Assembly: GCF_003704095.1 (NCBI RefSeq)
Contig: NW_020843837.1
Coordinates: 186,001-250,000 of the forward strand
Source of the DNA: Pocillopora damicornis
Lineage: Eukaryota
DNA length: 64,000 nucleotides
Direction: 5' to 3'
Part shown: positions 32,901 to 51,608 of the stretch, piece after piece
Layout of the letters: each line of letters begins with the position of its first letter
Numbering within the stretch: position 1 is the first letter of the stretch
Notes under the pieces: generated by a model
Database searches by the model: none
What the model was told of the DNA's origin: nothing
What the model saw: the letters and a program-made list of their open reading frames with translations, nothing else
Program-made: the position numbers and the translations under genes

Positions 32901-35900
32901 TAAAACAATGAAACATTTTCTTTCGTCCTAAACGTGCAGCCAAAATGGCAATTATTAAATTTCTACGCGCAAAACGCAAATTAGCTTCTACTTTTTCACT
33001 TACTTGAAAATACAATAGAAAAAATGTGCTAACGTTTCTTCATTTTCTCGTTGTTGGAGTAAAAAAAAAGAAAAAATTAAGAAATCCAATACGAAACTTA
33101 GATCCTACCTCATACATGCAGGTGTCTAGTTGCTATTCCTTCACCATTCGTTTCCGCCAACCGCTCAAAATATTTTTTCGATTCTCACTTGCGCTGAAAC
33201 TGTAGAGGGAATGACAAACATTAAACGTAATAATGACCGACACCGCGGTACATATTTTATATTCCGTCACAGCTATCGAGGTTTTGCCCTCATTGCGTAT
33301 TTTTTTAGATTTCTCGCTGTAAATGGTGAAAAATATTTTTACATATCTTGGTAAATACCACCTTGAGATACATTTAAACAGGAGAACCTCCTTTGTGACT
33401 TTTGGAGTATTACCGAGTACCTGGTAACAAGCGTTCAAATTGCAGATTACCTTAACAGGCTAGCGAAAAAAATTCATGTGAAATTCAAATTGAGAAAAGA
33501 TCATTTCAGTTTAAGTCATATCAGCAGCTGTAGTACGGGTCGGCTTATTTTATCTTGTTTTATGACAGGATATTAAGTTTTTGCAAACGCAATTTGGTTA
33601 TTCACGTTACGTAAGTGACAAAAGGGCTATTTTTCACTGAAGACATCACTTGCGTTTCTCTCTTTCACTCTATTTAAGGGAAAAGGGATAAAAATGAAAG
33701 CTTGAGCACTAAAAAAATTATGTCGTTAAATTTTGAGCAATCAAACTCATGACGAAAATAAAGGAAAAATAGAAGAATTAAAAAAAAACTCGATCGTTTT
33801 CTTCATGCCACGCGCCATCAATGATCCAAGTTCAATAGAATATTCCTAATTTCAGTTTAACATTGATATCCAAATATCTTGTTACCTTCCAGATCTTTAC
33901 TAAATGATAGCCTTGCGATTTAGGATTTTTTTACTGATCGACATTTTTGTTGATACTTCTGAATCAAATAATGGTAATTGTGAAAACATAGGTATCTTGT
34001 TTAGTGAAATAAATGAGCAAATACGAAAGCCAAATTTAACGGATGTTGAACAAGTTTATCTGGCTTTTTCATTGCGTCCATAATTGAGGAGACTCTTAAA
34101 AACACATTACAGTGAGTTTTAAAACATCTATAGTGCATGATGTGTCACCGAAAAATGGTCTTCATTACACAAAGTATTTGTGACTACTTAAAATGTCGGT
34201 ACTGACTATTCTCAATAACGCATTTAACGAGTAAGTCTCATTAATATCCATGCATGGCTAAACAATGTTTCAGAAAAGAAACATTTTCTTTCTTGATGTA
34301 AATGAGCATAAATAAAGCTCTTGCAACATAAGTTTCAAAATTCATCCCTTTTTATAAAAGTGTTTGAATGACTATGTGGAACGTGTCATTTTCGTGATAG
34401 TTCTTCTAGATTTGATTCCGTATAAACTCGAAAGAGAACTACAATGAAGAAAAACCAAAACGCCCAAGGATAATGGTCGAAAAAACAATGCCTGCACGCA
34501 TAATTTGATATAATTCACATAAACAAAACATACTTCTCTTTCTTATGCGGCAGCTAGTCGTCGCTTTGGGAAAATAATCAAGGTGAAGATAGGTTATCTA
34601 TCTGACGCGAAATCTGTTGGTGAAAAGCTGACTTTGTTTTTTCAAAGTTCTGAATCTTTTCTCTTATTTTGGACAAAGTAATGAAACATGGCGGAAACAT
34701 ACAAGGTATACCTAATCAAAATAAAGTAAAATCTTAGAATAAATTTTAAGCGTAATTTTTTTTTTACCGTGCCTGCGGTAAAGTAAGAATGTAAGATGAG
34801 ATACAACAAATTTTAAATGAAAAAATTTACCTTGATTTTAACCGTGGTTCTCCGCAGTACGTCGTTTATGAGTATCACCTGGTTTTGTTTGGACTGAGTC
34901 AAGTTACAAGATGTTATCTCTCTTATATGGAGAATGTCGAATTCATGTAGAGGTAGATAATTGATCTAAGACAGGAAATAATTACTCTCTATAGGTAGCT
35001 GCAATTTCACCAAAAAATTGAATCGGAGGAGGCGTTTAAGAGAGAAGGCCAAGAAGATTCTGGTAATGCTACGCTGGGGTTCACAAATGTGGAGTTAAGT
35101 AAACATCCGAAAATACCGCGGAAACGTCATCGATCGTCAAATCTTGTGACGTAAGAAGCACTTTTATTATAGATGTAAGACCAGGGTGCATTTTAAGTAT
35201 AGAAAAGGTACCTGGTGACATGTATTAAGCGTTTTTCGAACACTTATTCGTGAAAAGAAATAACTAGAAATGGGAACAGTATGAAAACATTAGGCTGTAC
35301 TATTGGCTGTCAACGTCAATGATACGTAGGAGGTATTGCCAAATATGGTTGATGTAAGGAGCCCTTACTGTTTCGATAAGTTTTTAGGAAGTTCTTTTCA
35401 TCACTTTCTCGATGTCAAGCTAACTATAAAATTACGCCCACTCTAAGCCAAGCTTGTTCCTGTTATTTTAACTCCCGTCTGCGACGTCTTCTGGAAAGAT
35501 GTAAGCCCTTTCAGGTCTGGTATGTCTTATGGTGAGTTTTTTACCGCTGAAAACGAAGCCTAACTTGGACTGAATTTATCCTGTTTATCATACATGAGGA
35601 GGTTCTGGTAACATAATGTCGTGCTTGTATCTGGTCCATGTCCAGGCTTTCAAATTCCTCTCTATCCTCTATTAGATTAAATTTTGATCCTATATAGATC
35701 CTACTCATTGCAGATAAACTCTCCTTCTACAAATTTCTTCAACTAAAATTGCGAATGGTTAAAAGATACATGCCACTTGGATAAACAATGGTTTTGTTCT
35801 TGTTCTTCGTCTTTACACCCGGAAATGTTAGCCTCTTCCGAAAGAGGATTTACTTTCATGTTATTCAAGAGGTAGGAAAACGACAGTTCGGTCACATCAT

Positions 35901-36797
35901 TTGTTTTAGTCACACAACGAAAACACAATCGTATAAATTAAAGGTGACTTCTGTAACTAAAAGCTTAGCAGACCTTAGCGGTCTCCAAAATTCTGTTTTA
36001 GATGCCACATTTCCTGCAATTTTCCCTCGTGCTTTCGATCATTATATCGGAGAGATCACTATCAAAACTTCCGTGGTTGGCGTGACCTTTACAAGTAATT
36101 TAAAGTTATTGCTGATTACCATAATCAGGATTTCCAGAAGTCACGCTAAACAAAGACGAAATGATGTCAGACAGTTTCCGTTCACATGACTTGGTTTCAT
36201 CTTCCATAACGATAAGGTTTTAATTCGCAATACTACCAATTCCTCTATCACCATCAACCAAAGGCTTCCATATCGTAACAAAGCGTCGAAATGGCTGAAA
36301 ATGTCTTTATTTTATGTAAAGCTGCTTTACTGATTCTGAGTGTTATAGTCTGAGAGGTTTAATTGGCAAGAGTGGCATCTTTGATAAGGTGAGTTGACTT
36401 TCACAAGTGAATGTATTGTGGAGGTTGTTGGTAAATTACGTATAAATGAGAGAAAGAATTGGGTTGCACTTTAAAAAAAACTGAAAAAGCTTCGATTGGT
36501 TTATTGCTGAAGTACAAAGAAAAAAAATGAATTACTGAACTGATTTGTGTTTGCATGTGGTCCAGAACCATATATTTGTCTTGGTATCATATATCAACGG
36601 GTCTTTACTTGTACCACTAACTTGCGATCGTGTGGAAGCATTTGTAAATGCCTTTGAAGACAAGAAGCGATGTTTATAAGTGAGTGTATTCATATCAGTT
36701 CGCTTAAAAAAAACTCGTTTCCAGAAATGAGCGAGGAATATTCCTCTCATCGAAGATCCATTAAAAGAAAGTGTCTTTTTTCTCTGTCTGGGCGGTA

Positions 36798-37009
36798 TTA
36801 ACCCTTTACACCCTAATATCAGTATAAATATTCTCCATACTGTTCTCTATACACTCCCAAAGCGGCCAACAATGAGAATTTGTTTAACAATCAAGAGCTG
36901 CTCAAGTTGGTAATCATCTTCTCTTTCCTCATGACTTTCACGTTTGATTAAGAGCTGGCATAGTAAGGAGAAATTAGATGCTTATCACTCTTAGGGGCTA
37001 AAGGATTAA
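36798..37009 (-). mobile_element. piggyBac-like MITE family A
   Basis: TTAA-CCCTTTA ... TAAAGGA-TTAA; reverse-complement homologue of 6541-6738. Confidence 0.75.
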
Positions 37010-37989
37010 CCTGTTTTGGTACCCGACCGGTGTGCAGTTGGCAGTTTTCATTCTTCATCATACTGACCTCGTGAAGAACTTTTCATCGACTTCTCCGAAT
37101 GACTCGAGTCTGATGGAGGCTCTTAAATTTCACTGCCACACCGTGGTAAAAACGAAGATCTAAGGCACTAAAAGCCTAAATTCAAGATATCAAGGTTTTG
37201 GAGAATATTGAACAATCAACAATCTGCCTCAGTTTTGGGTCTGTGCGTGTTTCCGTTAATAAATCAGACGTCAAAATTTTAATAGAAATAAGACTTTTCT
37301 GTCAGATCTCATAAAAAATGGATGACCTTTAAAATTAGGTTCGATTACCAGCCACTGTTGGGGAAATGAGCCTGCGTTCAGCCCCAAAGGTTCCTCCTCT
37401 GGAAGATCGAAGACCGGACACGTGAAAACGGTGGAAATCGAGCCTGTTAAATGGGGCCGGGTCGTATAAGAGCGAATTCAAATATATTTCTAATTTTTCA
37501 GGCGTCAAAACTTGGCAAACTTTCCGCATTTTCCAAATTTTGGCGGCGGTCGCATCAAGCTAGTGTTCTCTGACCAAACCTTCGCTGATTGATTCATAAG
37601 TCAATCACAAACCCATCTCGTTGAATCAGTACAACGCAGGAACGGACATGTTTTGCGCTGATCTTTTGCGTTTTGGTTGACGTTTGCGCTATTTGTCCTG
37701 GCTTCGATAATTGCGATGGAAAGAGGGCTAGCTAAAATTTTACGTTGAAGTTATCCATTTTCCAAATTGCTACAAGTCACAAGCATTTGAATAGAAGCGG
37801 TGCCCAAATGCCTCGTTTCCTCCGAAAGAGAAAGGGTCAAATGGATAAGGAAAGTCCTGCCATCGCGCGCCAAACTAGACTAGCTTACTAAATATTTTTC
37901 CCACTGAAATTTTATACCGACACGTCTTGCACAACATGACAGCTAAGCGGTTAAAAAAACATGATTGTTTGTTTTTCCAAAATTTGGTG

Positions 37990-38226
37990 GCCTCCCAGGT
38001 AGGACATCGGGTCCTTGAAGTTTGGCGAAAATTTGGTGATCCGCAATAATTTGGCAAGGTTTTCAAATTGGGGGTCGCACTCATTTTACGCTACTTGTTG
38101 ACAGATTTTTCACCTTAACAAAAAAATAAAAAAGCCTTAGCACGACCAGGGCCTTAGGGGCCTAAAAAAATATGGTACTATTTGCTGATTACTTTGGGAA
38201 AGACGGACGGCTTTTATTTTGCCCCA
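37990..38226 (+). repeat. Direct repeat, copy 1 (copy 2 = 39718-39892 plus 40279-40328)
   Basis: Shared GCCTCCCAGG..AATTTGGTGATCCGCA..CAAATTGGGGGTCGCACTCATTTTACGCTAC..AAAAAAATATGG followed by TACTATTTGCTGATTA..TTTGCCCCA. Confidence 0.85.
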
Positions 38227-38436
38227 AACCCTTTTACTCCCAAGATCTAATTTGTAATTCTCCTTACTGTCTGCCATTTAATTCTTATGATGTTAGCTAG
38301 AAGAATTTGGTTTTGGATCAACCAATAATCCCCTAATTGATATGTTTCTCTATTCTCATCACTTGGCTGCTTGATATTGTATTGATATTGTTAGGAGAAA
38401 TTCTGTCTTGGTCATTCCTGGGAGTTAAAAGGTTAA
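38226..38436 (+). mobile_element. piggyBac-like MITE family B
   Basis: Homologous to 20628-20837; ends AAAAGG-TTAA. Confidence 0.75.
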
Positions 38437-39154
38437 ATAGATGGGTTACTAAAGTATAACAATACGAGTAGCCTATTTCCCGCGAAAAGATAGTCTAAAA
38501 ATATACCGGTCGTGAAAATGCCGTGACATCAGGTCGATCTAGGCCAGTGTGGGAGTTGAACGCTCCAAGTAATGGGCTCCTGGTACAAGTCGTGGGTCGT
38601 GGGTGTGGGTACAAGTCGTGTCCGTAATAGTTAACAATTAATGGTTATAGTTCATATTTATCAATAATATTATTAATAGTACTTCTACTAATAATTAATT
38701 ATTGCTATTGTAGAGGGGAACGGTTTTTTTTTTCGTGAAACGTGACTTGGTTACATAGCCGTGAACGGTGAATCGCCTTTTTTTCTGGAAATTGCGAGAC
38801 GACTGGTTTTTGTTTTTGCGAAACGTGACTTGAACTGTTATTGTTCCTCTTCCTTCAAAAAAACTATCCAGTAAGCGTCTCAAAACAAGATCACGTGTAG
38901 AAACATGACTGTGATTAGCTAATCATCATTCTGGGCCCAAGGTCTTTTTATTCCAACAGGTAATTAAACACCTTTTATCTTCGTATCATGAAATGACCAT
39001 TTCATATTGCGTGAAACGTGAATGGCCCTGAAAAGTGATCTAGGACCCCCCCCCCTCCTTTACCACCTCAATTATGGTCTAAGTTGACTTAATTAACATG
39101 ACGTAATGTATACAAATTAAACAACCCTTCTCCAACTGTCAGGAACCAGTAATA

Positions 39155-39217
39155 GGCTCCTGGCTCCTGGCTCCTGGCTCCTGGCTCCTGGCTCCTGGCT
39201 CCTGGCTCCTGGCTCCT
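39155..39217 (+). repeat. (GGCTCCT)9 tandem repeat
   Basis: Read directly. Confidence 0.97.
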
Positions 39218-39444
39218 GTCAACTGTAAAATATTATTGTTTATTCCAATATCATCTCATCAGCTCAGTAAGACTACTATTTCATTGATTCACCTACATAT
39301 AAGTAATACATAATTTATTAAACCAATTTTTACCAAAAAATCTATACTTAACAATAATTAATTATTAGTAGTAGTACTATTTATATTATCATTATTAAAC
39401 ATAACTATCAACCATTAATTGTTAACTATTACCGACACGACTTA

Positions 39445-39672
39445 TACCCACACCTACACCCACACCCACACCCACACCCACCCCTACACCCACACCTACA
39501 CCCACACCCACAACCACACCCACACCTACATCCACACCTACACCCACACCTACACCCACACCTACACCCACACCTACACCCACACCTACACCCACACCTA
39601 CACCCACACCTACACCCACACCTACACCCACACCTACACCCACACCTACACCCACACCTACACCCACACCCA
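39445..39672 (+). repeat. (ACACCC/ACACCT)n hexamer microsatellite
   Basis: Read directly; it generates the THTY, GVGV and CGCR spurious ORFs. Confidence 0.97.
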
Positions 39673-39919
39673 CGACCCACTACTTGTACCCACGACCCAA
39701 GACCATTAGTCAAACTCGCCTCCCAGGCAGGACAACAGTTTGGCGAGAATTTGGTGATCCGCAAAAATTTGGCAAGTTTTTCAAATTGGGGGTCGCACTC
39801 ATTTTACGCTACTTTGTTGACAGATTTTTCACCTAAAAGAGAAAAAAAAAGCTTTAGTGCGACCCGGCCCTTAGGAGCTCAAAAAAATATGGGGACAGAA
39901 AAGTAGGGTAATCGTCTGG

Positions 39920-39983
39920 GGCAGGTTGCTTGAAAGGCAGGTTGCTTGAAAGGCAGGTTGCTTGAAAGGCAGGTTGCTTGAAA
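39920..39983 (+). repeat. (GGCAGGTTGCTTGAAA)4 perfect 16-mer tandem
   Basis: Read directly. Confidence 0.95.
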
Positions 39984-40687
39984 GATCCAGGATAGAAACA
40001 AACTCGGTTTTGAATTCCCTTCCGTCAAAGTGCTTTCCAAATTTATGAGAAGATGAGGTCTTTTGACCGGAGGACAAAAATAAAATGAACAGAGAAGCTC
40101 CTCGTTTGGTCGCTAGCGTGAGAAAGAGGAAAAATCAAAGTTTCCCACAAGAATATTAGCCGCAGATCTTTGCCTGACTCTGATGATTGAGAAGAATCAT
40201 TAAGTTTAAAATTACTTACCAAAAGTTCGTTGATCACGTGGGTCATTGCCAGGATCATGTTTGACGAGCATCGGTGATTACTATTTGCTGATTAGTTTGG
40301 GAAAGAAGGACATACTTAGTTTGCCCCATTGCAAATAAGCACCCACTGTTGGGACGGCGTTATCGGTTTAAACAGATGGGTTCCTGAAGTATAATAATAC
40401 CACGAGCCAACGACCGATGAACCGCCAAGAATTTCCTTGGGATTCAAAAGTACATACTCCCGTGGCCTTAAAATACCGGATTAGTAGATGCATCACGATC
40501 AACTCGGGGAATTCGACATTCCGCTTGCATTTTTTGCCTGCTCCTCCCTGTAACAATTAAGCGGGATTTACACATTTGATGCAAGCCATATTCTTACCTC
40601 TCCCATGAAAGAAGAACAGGATACACGGCTAAATGATTTTTTGCTTTTGTTTTTCTCTTTATTTATTTGTTAGGGTAAAGCAAAAAG

Positions 40688-43087
40688 ATGGAGAAAATAC
40701 CGCCGCAATTAGCTTTCTTCATTGGGTATGCTGTGGCGGTATTCCTAAGCAACACAAATCACTGGACTGAATCCATTGACTTTTATTTGGAATGCCTTGC
40801 GCTTTGGAATTCTGTTTCAAAGACGAAGACTTCCCCAGTGATGATTCTAATTGAACGAGTGATACGAGAAAAAGTTGCAAAGGGAGGACTCTTCTTTTAT
40901 GAACGGGGAAAGATACGTTATGACCTCGGTCAAGTTAAGGAATCAATAAAATACTTTGAAAAAGCGCTGACCCTTTTCAGTCAAATTGGTTCCAAACCAT
41001 ATGAGGCATGGTGTCACTGCCGCTTGGGCAGATCGCTCCACATTGCTTGTCAGTATGAAAGAGCCATGGAACATTATGAAAAGGTTCTCAGTGGTATTCA
41101 CGAAATATCCTCAAATGACATAAGACAAGAGCTCCAAGCAAGAGTGTACAACAACATCGGTGAGGTCAAGCATTATCGTGGAAGATGTGAGGAAGCTAAA
41201 AGCTATTATGAGAAAGCTCTTGAGATTAGCACTAGAGCAGGAAATGAGATAGATAAAGCAGTAAGCCTCAACAACCTGGGAGTTTTGCATCATAACTATC
41301 TGTCTAAACTTGACGAAGCACTTAACTTCCATAAAAAAGCACTCGAAATTCGTAGAAGACTTGGATGTAGAAGAGTAGAAGGAACGTCCTATACCAACAT
41401 TGGTGGAGTCTATGAGGCCCGTGGTGACTATGAAAAGGCATTGGAATATTATGAAAAAAGCTATTTAATTAGTTTAGAAGTCAAAGACAAGGTGCTAGAG
41501 GGAAAGAGTCTCTACTTCATTGGAAAGGTTCATAAGCTCCTAGGTCAGCTTCAAAAAGCCATCGAATACCACGAAAGAGCCCTAAAAATCAACCGGGAGA
41601 CCGGTGTCAAAACAGCTGAAGTTCTCAGTGACCTTGCAAATCACTATATATGCCTCGGTGATTACGAGAAAGCAGGTCATTATCATAAAAAAGCTATTAA
41701 CATGTGCAAAGAAATAGGGGATATCGAACACCTGGGAATTTGCTTAAGCAATGCCTATCAACTGCCTCTTTATCTTGGTGAATATGAAAAAACCAAGACA
41801 TGTTTAGAAGAGGCTATAACTTCTCACGAAAAGACTGGAAACAAATTGTTCCTAGCTACGACACTTTTTAATATCAGTAGTGTATGTGAGTCTGCTGGCC
41901 AATACCAGGAAGCACACGATTACTTAGAGAAAGCTCTAAAAATCAGTAGAGAAACCCAACACATACACGCAGAGACAATAGCATTAAGCTCTATGGGGTC
42001 CATGAATTTTTCTCTTGGAAAATATGAACAAGCCATTGAGTATACTAAAAAAGCACTGAAAATCGCTAAGGAGATAGGTGAAAAAGAAACAGAAGTGTCT
42101 TGTTATATTGTCCTCGGTTGTGTATATTTCGCTCAAAGTCAGAACGAGAAAGCAATCTGGTATCAGAGCAAAGCGCTTGAAATGAAGAAGGAAATTGGAA
42201 TCAAAGATCAGTCGCAAATCGATGTTCTACATATCTTAGGCCAAGCATATTCCTCTCAGGGAAACCTCTCGAAGGCGACAGAAACCTTCCGTGAAGGAAT
42301 GAAAATCCACCAAAGTACTCGTTCTTCCCTTAGAGATGAAACAAACAAGATTTTATTGGATAATCAGAACCTTTCTTGCTACAAATCTCTTTCGTGGCTT
42401 CTTCTTTGCGAGAGGAATTTCGACCAAGCCCTTTTCACTCTAGAGGTTGGACGAAGTCGTGCCCTGGTTGATCTTATTTCGAAGAATTACGGAATCAGCG
42501 GGAATCCTACTCAAAATGAGTTAACTCCAAATGCCCTTCAGAGCTTCTTGAAAGAACAAAAGAAGAACTTTCTCTTCATAGCAACGTTGAAAATGAAAAG
42601 TTTCTCCTTGTGGTTTGTCGACACAGGAGGAAGTGTAAAATTCAAACAGGTCAATGAAGACTTGGAAACGGAGCTATCAAAAGAAAGTAGTACCACTGAA
42701 GAGCCTGGAATGGATACTTCTTCATCAACTTTGGATGACCTGCAATGTGAGGATCGTTCATTGGCCTCGCTGTATGAAAATGATGTATTGGCTTCACGAG
42801 AACAAAAGTTAGAACCAAACAAACGTTCCGTGAAAATGCAAATGAAACAAATCGGAAGCAAATCTTACACTAGCCTTTCCGATATGGTCAAGTTGTACGC
42901 TGCCTTGATTGCTCCTATTTTTGATCTCATAGACAGCCCGGAGATCATCATATCCCCAGAACCTGGCGTTTTCTTGACACCATTTGCCTCGTTAAAGGAT
43001 GAAAATGGAAAGTACCTTTCTGAAACTGTGAGGGTCCGCCTCATCCCGTCACTAACGACACTGAAGCTCATTCACGACTCGGCAGCC
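40688..43087 (+). CDS. TPR-CHAT (TTC28-like) protein, copy A: N-terminus, TPR array and start of CHAT; cut by the assembly gap
   Basis: Roughly 12-13 TPR-like repeats of about 40 aa (YNNIGEV, LNNLGVL, YTNIGGVY..GDYEKALEYYEKS), EVGRSRALVDL linker, IIISPE..LTPFASLKDENGKYL CHAT start; splice acceptor TTAG at 40670-40673. Confidence 0.88.
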
Positions 43088-43187
43088 NNNNNNNNNNNNN
43101 NNNNNNNNNNNNNNNNNNNNNNNNNNNNNNNNNNNNNNNNNNNNNNNNNNNNNNNNNNNNNNNNNNNNNNNNNNNNNNNNNNNNNNN
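43088..43187. other. 100-N assembly gap (other gaps: 30351-30474, 47867-48372, 48493-48592, 49855-49954, 52168-52267)
   Basis: Runs of N; exact 100-N length recurs four times, so it is a placeholder of unknown true size. Confidence 0.99.
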
Positions 43188-46000
43188 TCGGTCAGATCAA
43201 AGAATCAATCAGCTGCCTAAAAAAGGCATTGTGCATCTACGAAAAAGCTGGTCCTAGATTGAGAGAGGCGTGGTGTCACTGCCACTTGGGTAGATCGCTT
43301 CACATTGCGTGCCAATATGAAAGAGCTATGGAGCATTATCAAAAGGCTCTCGATGTAAGTGGACTATCAGTACATGAGAAACAAGAACTCGAGGGAAGGG
43401 TTTACAACAACATTGGTGAGGTACATAATGTGCGTGGAAATTATGAAAAGGCTCGTCAGTATTATGAGAAAGCATTTAAAATAAATAAGGAAATTGGAAA
43501 TGAGATACACCAAGCGATATACTACAACAACATGGGAGTAATGAATCATAACTACCTGGGCAATCTTGAAGTAGCACTTGATTTCCACGAAAAAGCGCTC
43601 GAGATTCGTAAAAGACTTGGATACAGAAAAGCGGAAGGAACATCCTATAACAACATTGGTGGAGTGTATGAGGCGCGTGGTGACTACAAAAAGGCATTGG
43701 AATATTACGAAAAAAGCCTTGAACTTAGTGTAGACATCGAAGACAGAGTGTTGGAGGCAAGTAATCTGTACTTTATTGGAAAGGTTTCAATGATACTCGG
43801 TCAGTTGCAAAAAGCCATGGAATATCTTGAAAGAGCCCTTGAACTCAAATCAGACACAGGTGTCAAAAAGGCTGAAAATCTCACTGACCTTGGAAATCTC
43901 TACATGTACATCGGTGATTATGAGAAGGGAAATCAATATCACCAACAAGCCATTAAACTTTGCGAGGAATTGGGAGATCGCGAAATCATGGGAAAATGCT
44001 ATCAAAATGCTAGTGTGCTGCCCAGTTATCTCGGTGAGAATGAGAAAGTTAAGAGCTATTTAGAAAAGGCTATTGATATTCACGAAAAAACTGGAAACAA
44101 AGTGGATCTTGCTATGGCATTTACTGAAATCAGTTCTACTTATATTTCTGCTGGTCAACACCAGAAAGCATGCGAATGTTTACAGAAAGCTCTGAAAGTC
44201 AGTGAAGAAATCGGACACATCCAAATAAAGATATCAGTTTTAACTGGTTTTGCCCGTTTGAATTTTCATCTTGGGAAATATGAGCAAGCCATTGAGCATG
44301 CTGAGGATGCACTTAAAATCGCGAAAGAGATTGGTGAAAAACAAATGGAGGTGTCTTGTTACGTTCTCCTTGGTAGTGCCTATTTTACTCAAGGTCACAA
44401 AGAGAAAGCAATCCAGTATCAGAGCAAAGCACTTGAGTGGAAGAAGGAGATTGGAATGGAAAATCAGTCGCAAATCAAGCTTCATTACATTTTAGGCCAA
44501 GTATATTCCTCTCAAGGCAACTTCTCGAAGGCATGTGAAAACTTGCGTGAAGGTATTAAAATACACCAAAGAACTCGATCTTCCCTCAAAGATGAAACCG
44601 ACAAGATTTCATTGGATGGTACGAACTGTCCATGTTATAAATCTCTTTCGTGGCTGCTTCTTCGCGAGAGGAATTTCAACCAAGCCCTTTTTACTCTGGA
44701 GCTCGGACGAAGTCGTGCCCTTGTTGATCTAATGTCGGAGAGTTACGGAATCAAAAGGAGTCTTGTTCATAAAGAAGTAACTCCAGATGCCCTCCAAAAC
44801 TTTTTTAAAGAACAGCGAAGGAACTTCCTCTTTATAGCAACATTTCAAATGAATAGCGATTTCGCCCTGTGGTTCGTTGACAAAGGCGGAAGTGTAAAAT
44901 TCAAACTGGTAAAAATAGACTTAGAAACCGAGTTATTCAAAGAAAATAGTGCCCCCAAAGAGCCTGAAATGGATGCCTCTTCATTGACTTTGGATGATCC
45001 ACACTGCGAAGATCGTTCATTGGCTCTGCTGTATGAAAATGATCCATTTGCTTCACAGGAACAACAGTTAAAACCAAACAAAGGTTCTGTGCAAATGCAA
45101 GTGAAACAAATCGGAAGCAAATCATACATTGGCCTTTCCTATACGGTCAAGTCGTACGCTGCCTTTATTGCTCCTATTTTTGACCTCATAGACAGCCCGG
45201 AGATCATCATATCCCCAGAACCCGACATTTTTTTGATACCATTTGCATCGTTAAAGGATGAAAATGGAAAGTATCTTTCTGAAACTGTGAGAGTCCGCCT
45301 CATCCCGTCACTAACGACACTGAAGCTCATTCACGACTCGGCAGCCAGCTATCACTCTCAAAGTGGAGCTTTGATCATCGGAGATCCAGCAGTTGGCCCT
45401 GTAGAGATAAATGGAAGTGTAAAGACTCTAGATCCATTGCCTAAAGCCAGAGAAGAAGCGCAGATGGTGTCAAGATTGGTAGGAGTGCGCTGTTTGATAG
45501 GAGAGGAGGCCACAAAGGAGGAAGTCTTGAAAAGAATCCAAGAAGTGAGCTTAGTGCACATTGCTGCCCATGGTGATGAAACCACCGGGGAAATAGCTCT
45601 TGCTCCCAACAGGTCTGTCGTTGGAGTTCCTAAGATCGGCGACGTCTTGCTAACAATGAACGACATAGCTCAAGTTGGTATCAGAGCCAAGCTGGTGGTA
45701 CTCAGCTGTTGTCATAGTGCTCGTGGTAAGATATTAAAAGCCGAAGGGATTTATGGTATTGCTCGAGCTTTCCTAGGATCTGGTGCTCGTTCAGTCTTGA
45801 TGTCGCTTTGGGCTGTCAATGATGGGGCTACCGAAGCATTCATGAATATATTCTACAAGTTCTTGATCCGTGAGAAACTCAGTGCAAGCGAATCTCTTCA
45901 CCAGACCATGAGAAAGATGCGAGAGTCAGCACTGTACTCTGAGAGGGAGCACTGGGCTCCATTTGTCTTACTTGGAGACGATGTAACTCTCACATTTTAA
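43188..46000 (+). CDS. TPR-CHAT (TTC28-like) protein, copy B: TPR array and complete CHAT protease domain; 5' end lies in the gap
   Basis: Colinear with copy A (43188 pairs with 40926; 45346 with 43087). CHAT motifs LIIGDP, LPKAREEA, VHIAAHG, LVVLSCC, GIARAFLGSGARSVLMSLWAV, HWAPFVLLGD. Confidence 0.92.
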
Positions 46001-46209
46001 GGGGTAGGTAAGATGGAAGACATCAGTCGATTTGATCTTTAAATACCCGATTAAGAGGACCAATAAAGCTAGCTAAACTACATGTTTCGCCCCTGATAAG
46101 TTTCCTCGTCGGTGGACCGAAGAAATAAGGTCTGAAAAGATATTCAAATGCGGATAACAGATTTCAAAATCGCAACTATCGGAAGTTAAATCATTTGGAT
46201 TACTGTTTG

Positions 46210-46285
46210 GGGTGTTGGCCTGGAACTCAAACTTGGGACCATCAGTTGTGAAAACAGGGCTTAGACCTCCTAGCTACGCTACCTC
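46210..46285 (-). mobile_element. tRNA-like SINE head (degenerate)
   Basis: Minus strand GGTAGCGTAGCTAGGAGGTCTAAG (A-box like) ... AGTTTGAGTTCC (B-box like); no intact cloverleaf. Confidence 0.4.
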
Positions 46286-47315
46286 GAATTAAAAAATGGT
46301 TTTATTTCTTTGTCATTGTAAGCCTTTCAGCCCGCGGTGTCAATTAATTTGTCCTGGATTTAATTTCATTGCCATGCCTATTTACTGACGTATGAGTTTC
46401 TTGTCCCAAATTGTTGTTGTTTTTTTCGTGCAAGCAATTTTCTTTTCTTTTGAATAAAAGCGCCCCCTGTATAAACTTTGATAGAGATTTAAGATCTTTT
46501 AATATGTTTATGGTACTTAGGTAATCATGCAAGAGGACAAACATGGATATGATCATCTCTGAGTCCTGGACCTTGTGCTACAGCGATGAGGTACAGCCAT
46601 GTGAAAGCACCACTTTGTAATTTACAATGCTTAGGGCACTCGAAACTGAGTCTGCCAAGTTGACATTTTTATTCCATTTGCTTAGTCTTCTTCTTAGTCA
46701 CCAAGAACGTAGCCGGAGTGACATTAATATCTGAATTTATTTTGTGCCTTCCAAACCGTTCTAACAACCAAAATAGGGCAAAAGCTCAATTTTTTTACAT
46801 ATGGTGTTAATTCTTGACCACAAAGGTTCAAGAATTATAATGTAATGATATCTTTAGCTTTATCTTAGCTCTAAAACTGAAATCTAAAGGAGTTTTTGGC
46901 CGGTTATACCATTTTTTAAGCAACTTGTTACATCAAGAAGATGATCATGTTCAGTTCAACAGTATTTTAGCATTTCTTTGACATCACTTCCTTTTGTTAA
47001 GATTTGCATTTTAATACAATTAAGTCGTATCAAACGAGAAAGAGAACGATAGAAGTATATTTTGATGTAAGAAATTAAAATTTTCAATTCCATAGCCAGT
47101 TCTGGTCACACTCCGCATAGCCGCACGTGATAGAAACCTTCTAAAATGCAAGGAGTCTAACTTTTTTTGTTTATCTTTTGGGTAAAATATACAAATCGAA
47201 ATTTTTTATGATTCTTATGATAAAATCATATTTCACTGATCATTTTCAGGTCTCTTGAGATTGCTTCTGATTTCAGAAATGTTTGCGAGGTCTAGAAAAA
47301 ACCAGTCCTTTGTAC

Positions 47316-47530
47316 GAGGGTCTCAATGGGGTTAACTGATAGCCGTAAAATAGCCAAGAAATGTAGCCGTTATCCGTAAAAATTGACAAATTTCAAGCGA
47401 CAGTCGTAAAAAAAGTTAACGGTTAAAAAATTTTCAGGTGACAACAGCGGGATGATATCAACCGTTAGCCGTAAAATGGCCAAAACATTTTACTGTTAGC
47501 CATAAAAGCCATCACCCCATTGAGACCCTC
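47316..47530. mobile_element. MITE with perfect 17-bp TIR GAGGGTCTCAATGGGGT
   Basis: GAGGGTCTCAATGGGGT / ACCCCATTGAGACCCTC; internal repeated TAGCCGTAAAA motifs. Confidence 0.85.
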
Positions 47531-49481
47531 CTTTAGGAAATGTTAAATCACGTGGACAATATTTATTTATCTGTAAGGCCTCTGGTGAGAAAGATAACCT
47601 CTCTTTTCCTCAGTTGATGGGTAATGGAGCCATGGAAATTTATCGGCCAGTCCAGCAATCTATACGGGCTCATTATTTTTTAATTCTTTACCAGGGTTTT
47701 CATTTTTAACAATACGAGGTAGGTTGTTGTCTTTAAGCAACAGCATTTTATTATCAGTTTCACGTCAACAATGACTTATTTTCAAAGAGTAATTGTAGTC
47801 TGAAGCGACGCGACGCAAATGATGTAGAATCGATAAGTCTAGTGTTAGATCAAAGTCAGTATCTGANNNNNNNNNNNNNNNNNNNNNNNNNNNNNNNNNN
47901 NNNNNNNNNNNNNNNNNNNNNNNNNNNNNNNNNNNNNNNNNNNNNNNNNNNNNNNNNNNNNNNNNNNNNNNNNNNNNNNNNNNNNNNNNNNNNNNNNNNN
48001 NNNNNNNNNNNNNNNNNNNNNNNNNNNNNNNNNNNNNNNNNNNNNNNNNNNNNNNNNNNNNNNNNNNNNNNNNNNNNNNNNNNNNNNNNNNNNNNNNNNN
48101 NNNNNNNNNNNNNNNNNNNNNNNNNNNNNNNNNNNNNNNNNNNNNNNNNNNNNNNNNNNNNNNNNNNNNNNNNNNNNNNNNNNNNNNNNNNNNNNNNNNN
48201 NNNNNNNNNNNNNNNNNNNNNNNNNNNNNNNNNNNNNNNNNNNNNNNNNNNNNNNNNNNNNNNNNNNNNNNNNNNNNNNNNNNNNNNNNNNNNNNNNNNN
48301 NNNNNNNNNNNNNNNNNNNNNNNNNNNNNNNNNNNNNNNNNNNNNNNNNNNNNNNNNNNNNNNNNNNNNNNNAGGATAACGTGTCAACACACACGTGCAC
48401 CAAACCATTATGGAGCATTCATAGATACAGTCAGCCAAAGGTAAGGTTGCCTGCTCAAGAAATACTTGTTTAAAGCAAGCTGTATTTATTTTNNNNNNNN
48501 NNNNNNNNNNNNNNNNNNNNNNNNNNNNNNNNNNNNNNNNNNNNNNNNNNNNNNNNNNNNNNNNNNNNNNNNNNNNNNNNNNNNNNNNNNNNACTGATTA
48601 AATAAAAATCTTGGTCGAGATATGGAACTCATCTGTCAACACAACTCCTCCCTATCCCAACCCTTACAATTTTTGAATTCACACAATAAAATATATTTTA
48701 GGAACAGAATATGTGAGAGTCCTGCCCTTTAAAAGAATCTAAAGATATTGTTGTTTTGTACCTCAGAATGCATTAATAAGACTTAAAAGACTGATCTTTA
48801 CCCTTTGACAAGTTTGGAATTGGTGACCCAAGCAGGAGTACTAGACTCCTGTTAATCTAGCTTCTCCCTTGTTGTAGTGATGAACCCTTTTTACAACACG
48901 ATTAAAAGGAATTGCCTTTTATATTTTGAGTCAGAGTATATGTATCTTTACCTCTGAGTGTGTGCTAATATCTTCAACCAGTAGGTTTGTCTACTGACAA
49001 ACAAACAAAATAATGAAATTCTAGAACCCTTTCCTGGAAGAAACTTGTAACTTTCTTCATTATTTTGTAATGAAAATCCGGCAATCGTAAAAAAGTTGAC
49101 CCATCAGTTGTCCACTAATTAAAATAATAGAACTTTTTAGCTTCATATATCATAGATAAGTCACTTGGTCTGAAATAGGCAAACCACAGTTGCTGCCATA
49201 ACAAATTTAGAAGCGAATCATAAGGGATGATTGACTGTTGCTGCACCTGTAACTGCTACAGAATTTCCACAAAGCTGGATTTGTATTTTCTTTATTATGT
49301 GCTAAGGATCCTAAGCTTTAGAAGTTAAGTATCCATGCTTTAATTCTTCAAGTACCAGTCACACAAACTGAATTTGTGTTTTAATCTGCATGAGTAAATG
49401 GTCAGAAAAATAACTCTGTCTTGTCTCGATTTTTAAATGTTGTGGTTGTTTTTCAGTTTCTTTTAAAACAGATAAGGAATT

Positions 49482-49625
49482 TAGATAAAAAAAGATCAAA
49501 GTAAATACTTAAGAGTATCTAGTACCAAAGTGTGTTCTCAACATTTTGAAGACAATGATTTTAAGTTTGTATACAGCCGAACTAGAAGATTGAGAGATAG
49601 CACCTGTCCTTCTTGCTTTCAACAG
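49482..49625 (+). pseudogene. THAP zinc-finger domain relic
   Basis: Frame from 49482 reads *IKKDQSKYLRVSSTKVCSQHFEDNDFKFVYSRTRRLRDSTCPSCF, matching THAP W...VCSxHF...RRLxxxAVPT.F with TAG at the conserved Trp position. Confidence 0.7.
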
Positions 49626-51256
49626 GAGGCTATTTCAAAAAAACATTTGTTTTTTTTTCCATCACAAATTGTAATTGTTTCAAAGTTTGCTTGGAAGAGT
49701 TTCAAATAAGTTTTACATTCATATGAACCCATATTGAGATAAAATATTTTCCTGAAGCTTCCCTCGTTAATCTGCATTACTTCTGTTTTCTATACTACCT
49801 ACTTGCTAAAAAATGTTGTTTATGGAGAATCTTGCCAAAATTACAACTCTAAATNNNNNNNNNNNNNNNNNNNNNNNNNNNNNNNNNNNNNNNNNNNNNN
49901 NNNNNNNNNNNNNNNNNNNNNNNNNNNNNNNNNNNNNNNNNNNNNNNNNNNNNNGTTCAAATTCTCGGAGGGTGTCCAGTGGGGGAGGGGGATTTGAAGC
50001 TTTGAATTGATTGATGCATAATTGATGCATAACCATCGGTTACATAATTCTCTCTTGATTGTTAACAAAACGGGCATCCTCCTTTAATCAATACGCGTAA
50101 TAACGTCTTAGGATTTCGTCGGTAATTAGTATTAGTAGTGATGTTCATAAATTGCTCGAGTGTTGCCGCGCAAATTTTGCTTGTTGCGTGACGCATTTGA
50201 TTGACGTAGGAAAAACACTGGAAACTAGATAAGAGAAAATCCAACATGGCGTATATATCAAGAGTTCAAGATTCCAAAATGGAAACAAAAACGGTGCAAT
50301 CATCATTTCCTTTCATTTCATGTTGACTATTGATTAGTGGCATTTGGATGGAATAGATGACTCCGCACTGAGTGAAAAACTTTTAAAAGCTATCAACGCG
50401 TGACATTCAGAAAACTACTTGAGGTTCAGGTATACTTGGCTCGGCCTCCCAGACCGCGCGCGAACGATATTGAACGTGGGCTATAGCTCAACAACCTCTT
50501 TCCCAGAGTTCCTCTTCTACCCGCCCACTCTCTCTCTTTCTCTCTTTCTCTTTCGCTCCAGAAGGCGAGAAGGAGAGAGAGATCTTTGAAATGAGGTTGG
50601 CCCTTCAAATAATGTTATGGTTTGTTTCCCTTGCCTTGGCGGCCTCGTTTTAAGTATACTGCAACACGAGCAATATTGGTTTTAAAACAAATTTATCCTT
50701 CGAGCACTGCAATTAGCCATTTACAGAAACTGTAAATGAAAATGGATGTCAATTCTGATTATAATTTTCAAAAAGTACTCATCATGCAAAGTGTATCCAT
50801 TAAAATTAATCTACCAATTTATTCAACAGATTCCTGTCAATCATAGTAAAATAGACACCAAACTGAATTGACTTCAAATAGAAACAAAAGACTGTAATAA
50901 AATCCGCTTAGTATACATAAAAGATGTAGATCCAGCAATGCCTTACAATAAAGTTCAGAATTTCTCTAAGAATGCACTGATTTAAAATTTATCAGTAGCA
51001 GTACTCAAACAGTATAAGTAAGTTTTCAAACGGAGAAGTGTATATTTACAGTTTGATCTTCAGGTCTACTTCAGGCAACTATGTGTTGTAACGTACGACT
51101 AAATGCATGTGTCTTACAATGTATTCCAATTAGTGAAATGCAATTTTATTTTAAAATTTTGCTGGTTTTGTCACTACTTTTCACTTCATTGACTTGTGCT
51201 CATTACGGAGTATTACTAACTGGTGTTCCAACTCCACCCTTAAAAATAATATAAAT

Positions 51257-51608
51257 TTAATTCAGTTTAGTCTCATCAAGGAAACCTGAAAGAGGGAGAG
51301 AGAAACAAGGCTAATTAATAAGTTATTGTTTATAAAGGTTGAACTCCCAAACTCCTTTAGAATTCTCCCTTTCAGGGACTTTATTATCATATCGAGAGAA
51401 CACCCTCTAGCTGATAGTTTCTCCAATTCTCTCCCTATCACCAGAAATAGACATCAGAAGTTACGTTACTAATAAATGAAGTGAAAGGGTCACAAGGCCT
51501 TCATTCATTAAAGACAAAGCATATATGTTGATAATGTTTAGAATAAAACAATTACCGCACTTGTCATCCTGCGAGTTGAGCTTGGACATCTTGGACATTG
51601 CGGCCTCA
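51257..51608 (-). CDS. Putative last two coding exons of an unidentified gene (51608-51556, 51285-51257)
   Basis: Good acceptors (CTTTTAG, CTTTCAG) and donor GTAAT; the spliced frame reads EAAMSKMSKLNSQDDKCGFLDETKLN*. Confidence 0.4.

What the first reader, a model, noticed from the sequence alone, without database searches (positions are those of the whole stretch)
40688..46000. TPR-CHAT locus: two divergent TPR 'sensor' bodies sharing one start and one protease end (divergent alleles or homogenised tandem pair)
Seen: copy A has the N-terminus but stops at the gap inside the CHAT domain; copy B begins at the residue matching A position 40926 and has the C-terminus. Their TPR arrays are only roughly 60-70% identical in protein by eye, with both frames fully open for over 2 kb. 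Similarity rises toward the CHAT domain, and the last ~50 nt before the gap are identical to the stretch ending at 45346. Inference: the layout 'shared 5' - body A - 100 N - body B - shared 3'' is what a scaffolder produces from a heterozygous bubble, or from tandem copies with near-identical collapsed ends. Either way a variable TPR solenoid is attached to a conserved caspase-family protease, the pattern expected of a polymorphic immune or allorecognition receptor-protease.
Basis: partly seen in the sequence, partly recalled or inferred. Interest (0 to 1): 0.85.

Follow-up and report, generated by a model that had tools for sequence, protein, structure and literature searches.

The report
Two coral TPR-CHAT genes, mis-scaffolded
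The 1770-residue reading frame is an assembly artefact: pieces of one coral TPR-CHAT protease gene were dropped into a hole in a distant sister gene, and both belong to a large, already published coral gene family.

Summary
The sequence is as described. Copy A (40688-43087) and copy B (43190-46000) flank a 100-N gap, are 66% identical in protein, and share 54 identical bases at the gap. The proposed layout is not real.

A gap-free long-read Pocillopora contig matches the window up to 43087 and again from 49955, with only 2107 bases between. Window 43188-49854 is three small contigs, one inverted, from gene B's own locus. In Stylophora and P. verrucosa that locus lies beside a DAO gene. Here the DAO gene sits at the very start of the same scaffold, about 226 kb away.

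Complete A-type (about 1019 aa) and B-type (1016 aa) genes each have their own start and their own CHAT end. The duplication predates the Pocillopora/Stylophora split.

A roughly 600-base tract in the CHAT domain follows a within-species tree, not the orthology tree. This indicates interlocus gene conversion and explains both the similarity gradient and the contig break.

Variation peaks at TPR residues 340-460 and is lowest in CHAT. Evidence for positive selection is only suggestive.

Both genes are ordinary members of the published coral TPR-CHAT (TTC28-like) expansion. Function is untested.

The parts
28976..40687 (.). Upstream flank of the gene A locus. It includes the orthologue of a Stylophora LRR-GPCR gene.
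   Evidence: Collinear with the upstream flank of the Stylophora A-orthologue (L033 143-9692). From 31319 it is 96-99% identical to the long-read Pocillopora contig L056 1-10000.
40688..43087 (+). Gene A, codons 1-800 of about 1019: N-terminal 80 residues, TPR array, linker and the first ~65 residues of CHAT. It is cut off by a contig end.
   Evidence: 95-96% identical to complete A-type genes L054 and L056. Groups with Stylophora P0034 at 100/100 support. Poly-A RNA contigs lie on it.
41705..42067 (+). Most variable TPR patch of gene A (residues 340-460).
   Evidence: Entropy peak among 18 A-type proteins. 23 non-synonymous against 2-3 synonymous differences to four other A-type genes. In the A-versus-B comparison, omega is about 1.1 at 41846-42026.
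42788..43087 (+). A-side part of the A/B gene-conversion tract. It ends in a run of 54 bases or more (43034-43087) identical to B.
   Evidence: Quartet sites over CDS 2101-2700: 2 orthology, 30 concerted, 1 other. Exact shared runs of 38 and 54 bases. Independent k=31 contigs of A stop at 42955.
43088..43187 (.). 100-N scaffold join that falsely places the A locus next to a piece of the B locus.
   Evidence: L056 runs on from the base matching 43087 into A's own sequence and reaches the base matching 49955 after 2107 bases. No letters were derived for the N run.
43188..47866 (+). B-locus contig 1: gene B codons 81-1016 plus stop (43190-46000) and 1.9 kb of B's own downstream flank.
   Evidence: 98% identical to Tara scaffold L032 7535-12226. 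92.7% to the P. verrucosa chromosome locus L055. 82.6% to the Stylophora B-orthologue locus L031, flank included. Identical to residues 30-965 of NCBI XP_027060185.1.
45050..45649 (+). B-side gene-conversion tract (CDS 2101-2700) in the first half of the CHAT domain.
   Evidence: Within-species A/B identity is 0.92-0.93 in Pocillopora and 0.96-0.98 in Stylophora, against 0.89-0.91 between orthologues.
45161..45979 (+). CHAT protease domain of gene B, with His at 45569-45571 and a Cys-Cys doublet at 45707-45712.
   Evidence: Pfam PF12770, 179.8 bits, profile positions 10-289 of 289. His194, Gly195 and Cys240 are invariant and Cys241 nearly so in 29 family members. The model's best fold matches are Craspase TPR-CHAT, separase, DdvA and SAVED-CHAT. 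Codons checked.
48373..48492 (+). B-locus contig 2 (120 bases) between two gaps.
   Evidence: 100% identical to L032 12696-12815.
48593..49854 (-). B-locus contig 3, placed in the wrong orientation.
   Evidence: Matches L032 15539-14290 (94.7%), L055 18653-17354 (92.1%) and L031 19849-19465, all reversed. Those three records are collinear with each other in forward orientation.
49955..57201 (.). Downstream flank of the gene A locus, where the A locus resumes.
   Evidence: 97-98% identical to L056 14508-23060. Collinear with the flank downstream of the Stylophora A-orthologue.

Best explanation
The locus is a scaffolding chimera of two real, complete, paralogous genes.

Gene A encodes about 1019 aa. 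Its locus spans the window from about 29 kb to 43087 and resumes at 49955. About 2.1 kb, holding A's own CHAT 3' end and the flank just after it, is missing from the assembly.

Three small contigs from the locus of paralogue B (1016 aa when complete; NCBI 'TTC28-like') stand in that hole at 43188-49854. By synteny, B's home is beside a DAO gene just beyond the start of the same scaffold, about 226 kb away. The Pocillopora damicornis assembly is short-read contigs joined by Chicago/HiRise.

Inferred cause: the contigs broke, and were then joined wrongly, because A and B share a gene-converted tract of about 600 bases in the CHAT domain with exact runs of 38 and 54 bases or more.

Shown by the data: A and B arose before the Pocillopora/Stylophora split. 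Their TPR arrays have diverged (66% protein identity). The CHAT core stays similar through constraint plus gene conversion after the split.

Inferred by analogy only: each protein is an intracellular sensor-protease, in which the TPR solenoid binds a partner and gates a caspase/separase-like His-Cys protease.
For: Collinearity of the A locus:
- L056 (2.17-Mb long-read contig with a complete A-type gene) matches window 31319-43087 and 49955-57201. Only 2107 bases lie between in L056.

Origin of the B block:
- The block matches B loci of a Tara scaffold (98%), the P. verrucosa chromosome (92.7%) and Stylophora (82.6%), flank included. One piece is inverted.
- No A-type gene lies within 7.3-10 kb upstream of B in L032 or L055. 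No B lies within 10 kb downstream of A in L056.
- In Stylophora, A and B are 327 kb apart on opposite strands.
- The Stylophora PRK/DAO flank of B maps collinearly to G000:C472:59-4931 on the minus strand, so B is expected just off the scaffold start.
- L032 and L055 carry the same DAO-side sequence 5-7 kb upstream of B.

Two complete gene types:
- Full-length B-type proteins have N-termini 55-61% identical to A's. Full-length A-type proteins have CHAT ends 88-90% identical to B's.
- The TPR tree gives (StyA, PocA) at 100/100 and (StyB, PocB) at 100/99.
- Quartet sites (orthology: concerted: other) are 153:11:15 for CDS 1-1900, 2:30:1 for CDS 2101-2700, and 14:3:2 after that.

Independent contigs from public runs:
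- A-type contigs stop at 42955 and B-type contigs at the homologous 45214.
- Two alternative contigs cover 45319-45562.
- B-type contigs run upstream of 43188 into sequence unlike A.
- Poly-A RNA runs hold both genes.

Assembly method and missing content: PMC6208414.
Against: - No reads of the sequenced individual were available. All runs were Logan contigs, so read-pair links and depth across the joins could not be checked.
- The gap-free references come from other Pocillopora lineages and from Stylophora. A P. damicornis-specific rearrangement is not formally excluded.
- C472:1-831 is only 85% identical to the DAO-side flank in L032 and L055, although gene B itself is 93-98% identical. This is unexplained.
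- The sensor-protease mechanism rests on domain content and fold similarity alone. TM-scores are about 0.5 and identity is 13-16%.
Confidence: 0.88

Rival explanations
1. True tandem pair. A and B really are neighbours in P. damicornis, and the gap hides A's 3' end, an intergenic spacer and B's 5' end.
For: Both copies lie on the same strand of one scaffold. Tandem TPR-CHAT arrays are common in corals (PMC12314368). The gap length is unknown.
Against: - L056 shows 10 kb downstream of A without B and rejoins the window at 49955.
- B's upstream 7-10 kb in L032 and L055 holds DAO-side sequence and no A.
- B's downstream flank stops at 49854, and the A flank follows.
- One B piece is inverted.
- DAO sits at the scaffold start.
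Confidence: 0.05
2. Divergent alleles. A and B are two haplotypes of one locus, laid end to end by the scaffolder as a heterozygous bubble.
For: The assembly paper reports high heterozygosity. The layout resembles flank - A - gap - B - flank.
Against: - Both have separate orthologues at separate loci in Stylophora.
- dS between them is 0.54 overall and up to 1.7.
- The flanks are not shared. B's downstream flank differs from A's, and B's upstream differs from A's.
- A-type and B-type contigs both occur in each of four unrelated runs, and each continues into its own sequence.
Confidence: 0.02
3. Real lineage-specific rearrangement. In this P. damicornis genotype a 6-7 kb piece of the B locus was copied or moved into the A locus, disrupting both genes.
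For: Non-syntenic, copy-number-variable TPR-CHAT regions between haplotypes are documented in Acropora. No reads of this individual were examined.
Against: - Every boundary of the block coincides with an assembly gap.
- The block is itself three contigs, one inverted.
- No second copy of B, and no A 3' end, exists elsewhere in the assembly.
- NCBI's own model treats B as a separate partial gene.
Confidence: 0.04
4. One giant 1770-residue protein with two TPR arrays.
For: The frame stays open through the gap.
Against: - The frame depends on an arbitrary 100-N placeholder.
- All close relatives are 1015-1019 aa.
- RNA contigs for B continue into a separate 5' end.
Confidence: 0.005

Closest known systems
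Coral TPR-CHAT domain-containing proteins (TTC28-like expansion; Acropora, Montipora, Pocillopora)
   Same: Same architecture: an N-terminal TPR array followed by a single C-terminal CHAT domain. The coding sequence is intronless. The family has dozens to hundreds of copies per genome, with more than 40 places in this genome. NCBI names gene B 'tetratricopeptide repeat protein 28-like'. The expansion is published (PMC12314368, PMC9145168, PMC6208414).
   Different: Nothing categorical. The specifics here are that the two paralogues lie more than 200 kb apart, are conserved across two genera, and exchange a CHAT tract by gene conversion.
Human TTC28 / TPRBK
   Same: TPR array plus C-terminal CHAT. 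It is regarded as the metazoan prototype of the architecture.
   Different: Per PMC12314368 most non-anthozoan animals have only 1-2 such genes, and TPRBK acts in mitosis/cytokinesis. From my own knowledge, not tested here: TTC28 is much longer, at about 2,500 aa. The coral genes are about 1,016 aa and highly multiplied. No orthology was tested here.
Csx29 (TPR-CHAT) of type III-E CRISPR 'Craspase'
   Same: TPR domain fused to a CHAT protease. It gives the best structural matches to the modelled CHAT domain (7y85_D E 9.4e-10, TMq 0.50). It is a documented case in which partner binding at the TPR side switches the protease.
   Different: 13-16% identity, and no sequence-level PDB hit for the CHAT part. 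Csx29 is bacterial and works bound to Cas7-11/crRNA. Nothing of that kind is expected or seen in this animal locus.
Separase, DdvA and SAVED-CHAT (other clan-CD CHAT/caspase-like proteases)
   Same: Same fold class and the same His-Cys arrangement.
   Different: Different regulatory domains and different biology. Similarity is at fold level only.
Paralogue-induced misjoin in short-read plus proximity-ligation scaffolds
   Same: Contigs end inside a stretch shared by two paralogues. Small contigs are then inserted, one of them inverted, into a nearby hole on the same scaffold, each join marked by a 100-N placeholder.
   Different: None. This is a routine artefact class.

Membership tests
CHAT-domain peptidase (Pfam PF12770, caspase-like clan CD) | Significant match to the CHAT profile over its full length | tested here: met
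   Gene B: 179.8 bits against a cut-off of 24, profile positions 10-289 of 289. Gene A matches only the first 73 positions because it is truncated (25.8 bits)..
CHAT-domain peptidase (Pfam PF12770, caspase-like clan CD) | Caspase/separase-like fold | tested here: met
   AF2 model with pLDDT 79.9 and pTM 0.82. Foldseek top hits are Craspase TPR-CHAT, separase, DdvA, SAVED-CHAT, gingipain and caspase-1, at probability 1.0 and TMq about 0.5.
CHAT-domain peptidase (Pfam PF12770, caspase-like clan CD) | Catalytic His and Cys present | tested here: met
   His194-Gly195 and Cys240 are invariant and Cys241 is at least 90% conserved in 29 family members. Codons are at 45569-45571 and 45707-45712. Which Cys of the doublet is catalytic was not resolved.
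CHAT-domain peptidase (Pfam PF12770, caspase-like clan CD) | Proteolytic activity | not testable with these tools
   Needs biochemistry.
Coral TPR-CHAT (TTC28-like) expanded family | TPR array at the N-terminal side followed by one C-terminal CHAT domain | tested here: met
   Seven TPR_12 stretches followed by CHAT in both copies. Complete relatives are 1015-1019 aa.
Coral TPR-CHAT (TTC28-like) expanded family | Member of a multi-copy family in the same genome and in other corals | tested here: met
   120 matches from 541 first-look candidates, with more than 40 places at E below 1e-80 in G000. Homologues occur in Stylophora, Oculina, Porites and Acropora. Supported by the literature.
Allelic pair (heterozygous bubble) | Both forms occupy one locus with shared flanks on both sides | tested here: not met
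   The flanks differ. A's flanks resume at 49955, and B carries its own downstream flank and a DAO-side upstream flank.
Allelic pair (heterozygous bubble) | Divergence postdates speciation, with no separate orthologues in a sister genus | tested here: not met
   Separate Stylophora orthologues with 100/100 and 100/99 support, 327 kb apart.
Tandem duplicate pair | The genes are adjacent in gap-free assemblies | tested here: not met
   No second TPR-CHAT gene lies within 10 kb of A in L056, within 10 kb of B in L055, or within 7.3 kb upstream of B in L032.
Type III-E Craspase Csx29 | Sequence-level homology to Csx29 and a Cas7-11 partner | tested here: not met
   phmmer of the CHAT part against PDB sequences finds nothing. 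Only fold-level similarity is seen, at 13-16% identity. The host is an animal genome. No Cas7-11 gene was searched for.

The most novel reading that the evidence does not exclude
Two TPR-CHAT paralogues lie more than 200 kb apart and inverted, and have been kept since before the Pocillopora/Stylophora split. They evolve as modules. Recurrent interlocus gene conversion keeps a ~600-base stretch of the protease domain alike within each species. Meanwhile one TPR patch (residues 340-460) diversifies under episodic positive selection. This is the evolutionary signature of a paired sensor-protease immune receptor that needs a common protease specificity.
Probability: 0.25. Interest if true: 0.45.

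Novelty: already known. Interest (0 to 1): 0.18.

Why it matters
The main value is as a correction. The 1770-residue frame, the 'shared start' and the 'shared protease end' should not be carried forward as biology. The public P. damicornis scaffold appears to be wrongly joined here.

The case also shows how gene-converted tracts between distant paralogues can break short-read contigs and then mislead a scaffolder. In a family of over 100 copies this can imitate alleles or fusions.

The real biology left is modest. It consists of a conserved paralogue pair of the published coral TPR-CHAT family, a conversion tract in the protease domain, and a variable TPR patch. These could guide population-level tests of whether the proteins act as immune sensors.

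Tried and rejected
- Single 1770-aa gene: rejected. The frame depends on the placeholder gap, and relatives are about 1016 aa.
- Alleles: rejected by synteny, by the tree and by dS.
- Tandem pair: rejected by gap-free relatives.
- Shared k-mer run at B's start, which a bubble would leave: only 7 bases match.
- The 208-base match upstream of both genes (38228-38435): it looked like a shared flank but is a dispersed repeat with dozens of copies.
All 24 runs are kept as contigs, and the tool warns that depth is one figure per contig, so only contig positions were used.
- A's own CHAT 3' end elsewhere in the assembly, searched with the Stylophora sequence: none found.
- Sequence search of the CHAT part against PDB: no hit. 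A fold search was needed.
- Conversion from B as the source of A's variable patch: rejected. Derived states are split evenly between the two A alleles, and only about half match B.
- Positive selection: not established. The whole TPR region of window A against L054 has 3 synonymous and 35 non-synonymous differences (binomial p = 0.012, one of several pairs, uncorrected). Other pairs, and the patch taken alone, are not significant.
- The look-up of encoding contigs for P0165: not on record.
- Earlier-findings searches by place and by five words returned nothing.
- Operators' rule: no letters were derived, printed or proposed for any N run. Other assemblies were used only for coordinates, lengths and identities.


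Full report
**Observation.** The window is G000:C472:186001-250000 of a 234-Mb, 4393-scaffold eukaryotic assembly. It is Pocillopora damicornis: the B copy is identical to residues 30-965 of NCBI XP_027060185.1, 'tetratricopeptide repeat protein 28-like [Pocillopora damicornis]'.

An open frame runs from 40688 to 46000. It crosses a 100-N gap at 43088-43187. It remains in frame only because 100 N plus 2 bases make 102.
- Copy A (40688-43087) encodes 800 residues: an N-terminal 80 residues, a TPR array, a linker and the first ~65 residues of a CHAT domain.
- Copy B (43190-46000) encodes 936 residues. It starts at the equivalent of A residue 81 and has a complete CHAT domain.
- The copies are 66% identical over 725 residues.
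- Nucleotide identity rises from 0.68 to 0.93 toward the gap, and the last 54 bases of A equal 45293-45346.

There is, however, no shared run at B's start.

**Two complete gene types.** A database search with B returned two sets of full-length proteins.
- B-type proteins of 1016 aa are 85-98% identical to B. Their first 80 residues are only 55-61% identical to A's.
- A-type proteins of 1016-1019 aa are 91-93% identical to A, and 95-100% at the N-terminus. Their CHAT C-terminal part is 88-90% identical to B's.

Neither a shared start nor a shared end exists.

**Separate loci.** In Stylophora pistillata the A-orthologue and the B-orthologue lie on one scaffold, 327 kb apart and on opposite strands.
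- The window upstream of A (28976-40338) is collinear with the upstream flank of the Stylophora A locus.
- Window 43188-48488 is collinear with the Stylophora B gene plus its downstream flank.
- From about 51.3 kb the window is again collinear with the downstream flank of the Stylophora A locus.
- A tree of the TPR-plus-linker region groups Stylophora A with Pocillopora A (100/100) and Stylophora B with Pocillopora B (100/99). The duplication therefore predates the split of the two genera.

**The join is false.** The evidence comes from several gap-free records.
- A 2.17-Mb long-read Pocillopora contig (L056) carries a complete A-type gene. It matches window 31319-43087 at 96-99%, and then window 49955-57201 at 97-98%. 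Only 2107 bases lie between in L056. The ends of the window's contigs at 43087 and 49955 therefore bound a hole of about 2.1 kb in the A locus.
- What stands there instead, between gaps at 43088, 47867, 48493 and 49855, is three contigs of the B locus:
  - 43188-47866 (98% to Tara scaffold L032, 92.7% to the P. verrucosa chromosome);
  - 48373-48492 (100% to L032);
  - 48593-49854, which is inverted relative to L032, P. verrucosa and Stylophora.
- Neither L032 nor the P. verrucosa locus has an A-type gene within 7-10 kb upstream of B. They have DAO-side sequence there.
- The Stylophora PRK/DAO flank of B maps collinearly to C472:59-4931 on the minus strand. This is the very start of the window's own scaffold, oriented so that B should follow just beyond base 1.
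- A's own CHAT 3' end is found nowhere in the assembly.
- The assembly was built from Illumina contigs joined by Chicago/HiRise. Its authors estimate that up to 14% of non-repetitive content is missing (PMC6208414).

**Why it broke there.** A four-sequence site test was run on Pocillopora A and B and Stylophora A and B (sliding windows).

| CDS positions | orthology | concerted | other |
|---|---|---|---|
| 1-1900 | 153 | 11 | 15 |
| 2101-2700 | 2 | 30 | 1 |
| 2701-3051 | 14 | 3 | 2 |

- In the middle tract, A and B are 0.92-0.93 identical within Pocillopora and 0.96-0.98 within Stylophora. Orthologues are 0.89-0.91 identical.
- Synonymous divergence between A and B falls from 1.7 at the 5' end to 0.18 by the gap.
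- This is the signature of interlocus gene conversion after the split of the two genera. Most simply it occurred in both lineages.
- The tract corresponds to window 42788-43087 on A and 45050-45649 on B. It contains exact shared runs of 38 bases and of 54 or more bases.
- Independent k=31 contigs from four public runs stop at 42955 on A and at the homologous 45214 on B. They then give two alternative contigs over 45319-45562.

That the scaffolder then misplaced the B pieces because of this similarity is my inference.

**Expression and gene structure.**
- Two poly-A RNA runs hold contigs over both genes and none over the immediate flanks.
- RNA contigs leave the genome near 40663-40672, where a pyrimidine tract and an AG precede the ATG by 15 bases.
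- They also leave it at 46003-46006, just after the TAA stop, where GT dinucleotides follow.
- The coding region is thus a single exon, probably with introns in both untranslated regions.

**Variation.**
- Among 18 A-type and 54 B-type full-length proteins, variability peaks at residues ~340-460 of the TPR array. It is lowest in CHAT.
- Pairwise dN/dS in B is 0.45-0.7 for TPR and 0.25-0.5 for CHAT.
- In the variable patch, the window's A differs from four other A genes by 23 non-synonymous and 2-3 synonymous changes.
- The whole TPR region of window A against L054 has 35 non-synonymous and 3 synonymous changes (p = 0.012, uncorrected).
- This is suggestive of positive selection but not conclusive. 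The B-type set may also include extra paralogues, since two clusters occur on one P. verrucosa chromosome.

**What it is.**
- The CHAT domain passes the Pfam test strongly.
- Its model (pLDDT 79.9) matches Craspase TPR-CHAT, separase, DdvA and SAVED-CHAT best.
- His-Gly and a Cys-Cys doublet are conserved in 29 family members.
- The genome holds more than 40 such loci.
- The expansion of TPR-CHAT genes in corals is published, with 276-304 genes in Acropora and 362 in Pocillopora effusa. It shows haplotype copy-number variation, and the function is unknown (PMC12314368; also PMC6208414).
- Earlier notes of this scan on other windows of the genome reached the same family assignment.

A sensor-protease mechanism, in which the TPR array binds a partner and gates the protease as in Csx29 or separase, is a reasonable analogy. 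It is not shown here.

**Verdict.** The layout interpretation is refuted. The 'variable sensor, conserved protease' pattern and a homogenised tract are real. The genes are ordinary members of a known family, so interest is low.

Noticed in passing
window 23015-24517 (-): A single-exon 500-aa open frame with a rhodopsin-type 7TM receptor domain (7tm_1, E 8.6e-21).
   Followed up: partly
window 28976-36249: Collinear with a Stylophora gene model carrying LRR_8 and 7tm_1 domains (an LRR-containing GPCR) upstream of the A-orthologue. A 1.5-kb part (33966-35523) also matches a second place in the Stylophora locus, so a repeat is embedded there.
   Followed up: no
window 38228-38435: A dispersed repeat of about 210 bases, with dozens of copies at 88-91% identity across the genome. 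It is also present upstream of gene B in the Tara scaffold and in P. verrucosa, where it can imitate a shared flank.
   Followed up: partly
window 40663-40673 and 46003-46009: Poly-A RNA contigs leave the genome sequence here. A pyrimidine tract plus AG lies 15 bases before A's ATG, and GT dinucleotides lie just after B's stop. This suggests introns in the 5' and 3' untranslated regions of otherwise single-exon genes.
   Followed up: partly
window 53807-54220: A 180-base tandem repeat (2.3 copies here). The family forms longer arrays on many other scaffolds and occurs near both the A and B loci of Stylophora.
   Followed up: no
G000:C472:1-831 (outside the window): The DAO-side sequence at the scaffold start is only 85% identical to the matching flank in the Tara scaffold and in P. 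verrucosa, although gene B itself is 93-98% identical. This is unexplained. It could be a divergent haplotype or fast-evolving non-coding sequence.
   Followed up: partly
L033:10001-13027 (Stylophora scaffold LSMT01000051.1): The Stylophora A-orthologue is annotated as two models of 694 aa and 302 aa. It has one in-frame stop between the TPR part and CHAT. This is either a pseudogene in the making or an assembly error.
   Followed up: no
P. verrucosa chromosome CM071750.1 (L055 and protein clusters 3 and 5): P. verrucosa has at least two B-type genes on one chromosome. The cluster-5 type differs from the others mostly in the linker between TPR and CHAT (32-36 synonymous and 48-50 non-synonymous differences there). 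B-type diversity in metagenomes is therefore partly paralogy and not only allelic.
   Followed up: partly
G000:C472:346337-351079 (L006, outside the window): Another TPR-CHAT gene lies about 118 kb downstream on the same scaffold, inside an open frame of 2162 codons. It is 48% identical to B over the C-terminal 570 residues.
   Followed up: no
NCBI XP_027060185.1 (P0121): The public protein model for gene B has 29 N-terminal residues that are not encoded anywhere in the window. The model was evidently completed from other evidence across the gap.
   Followed up: no
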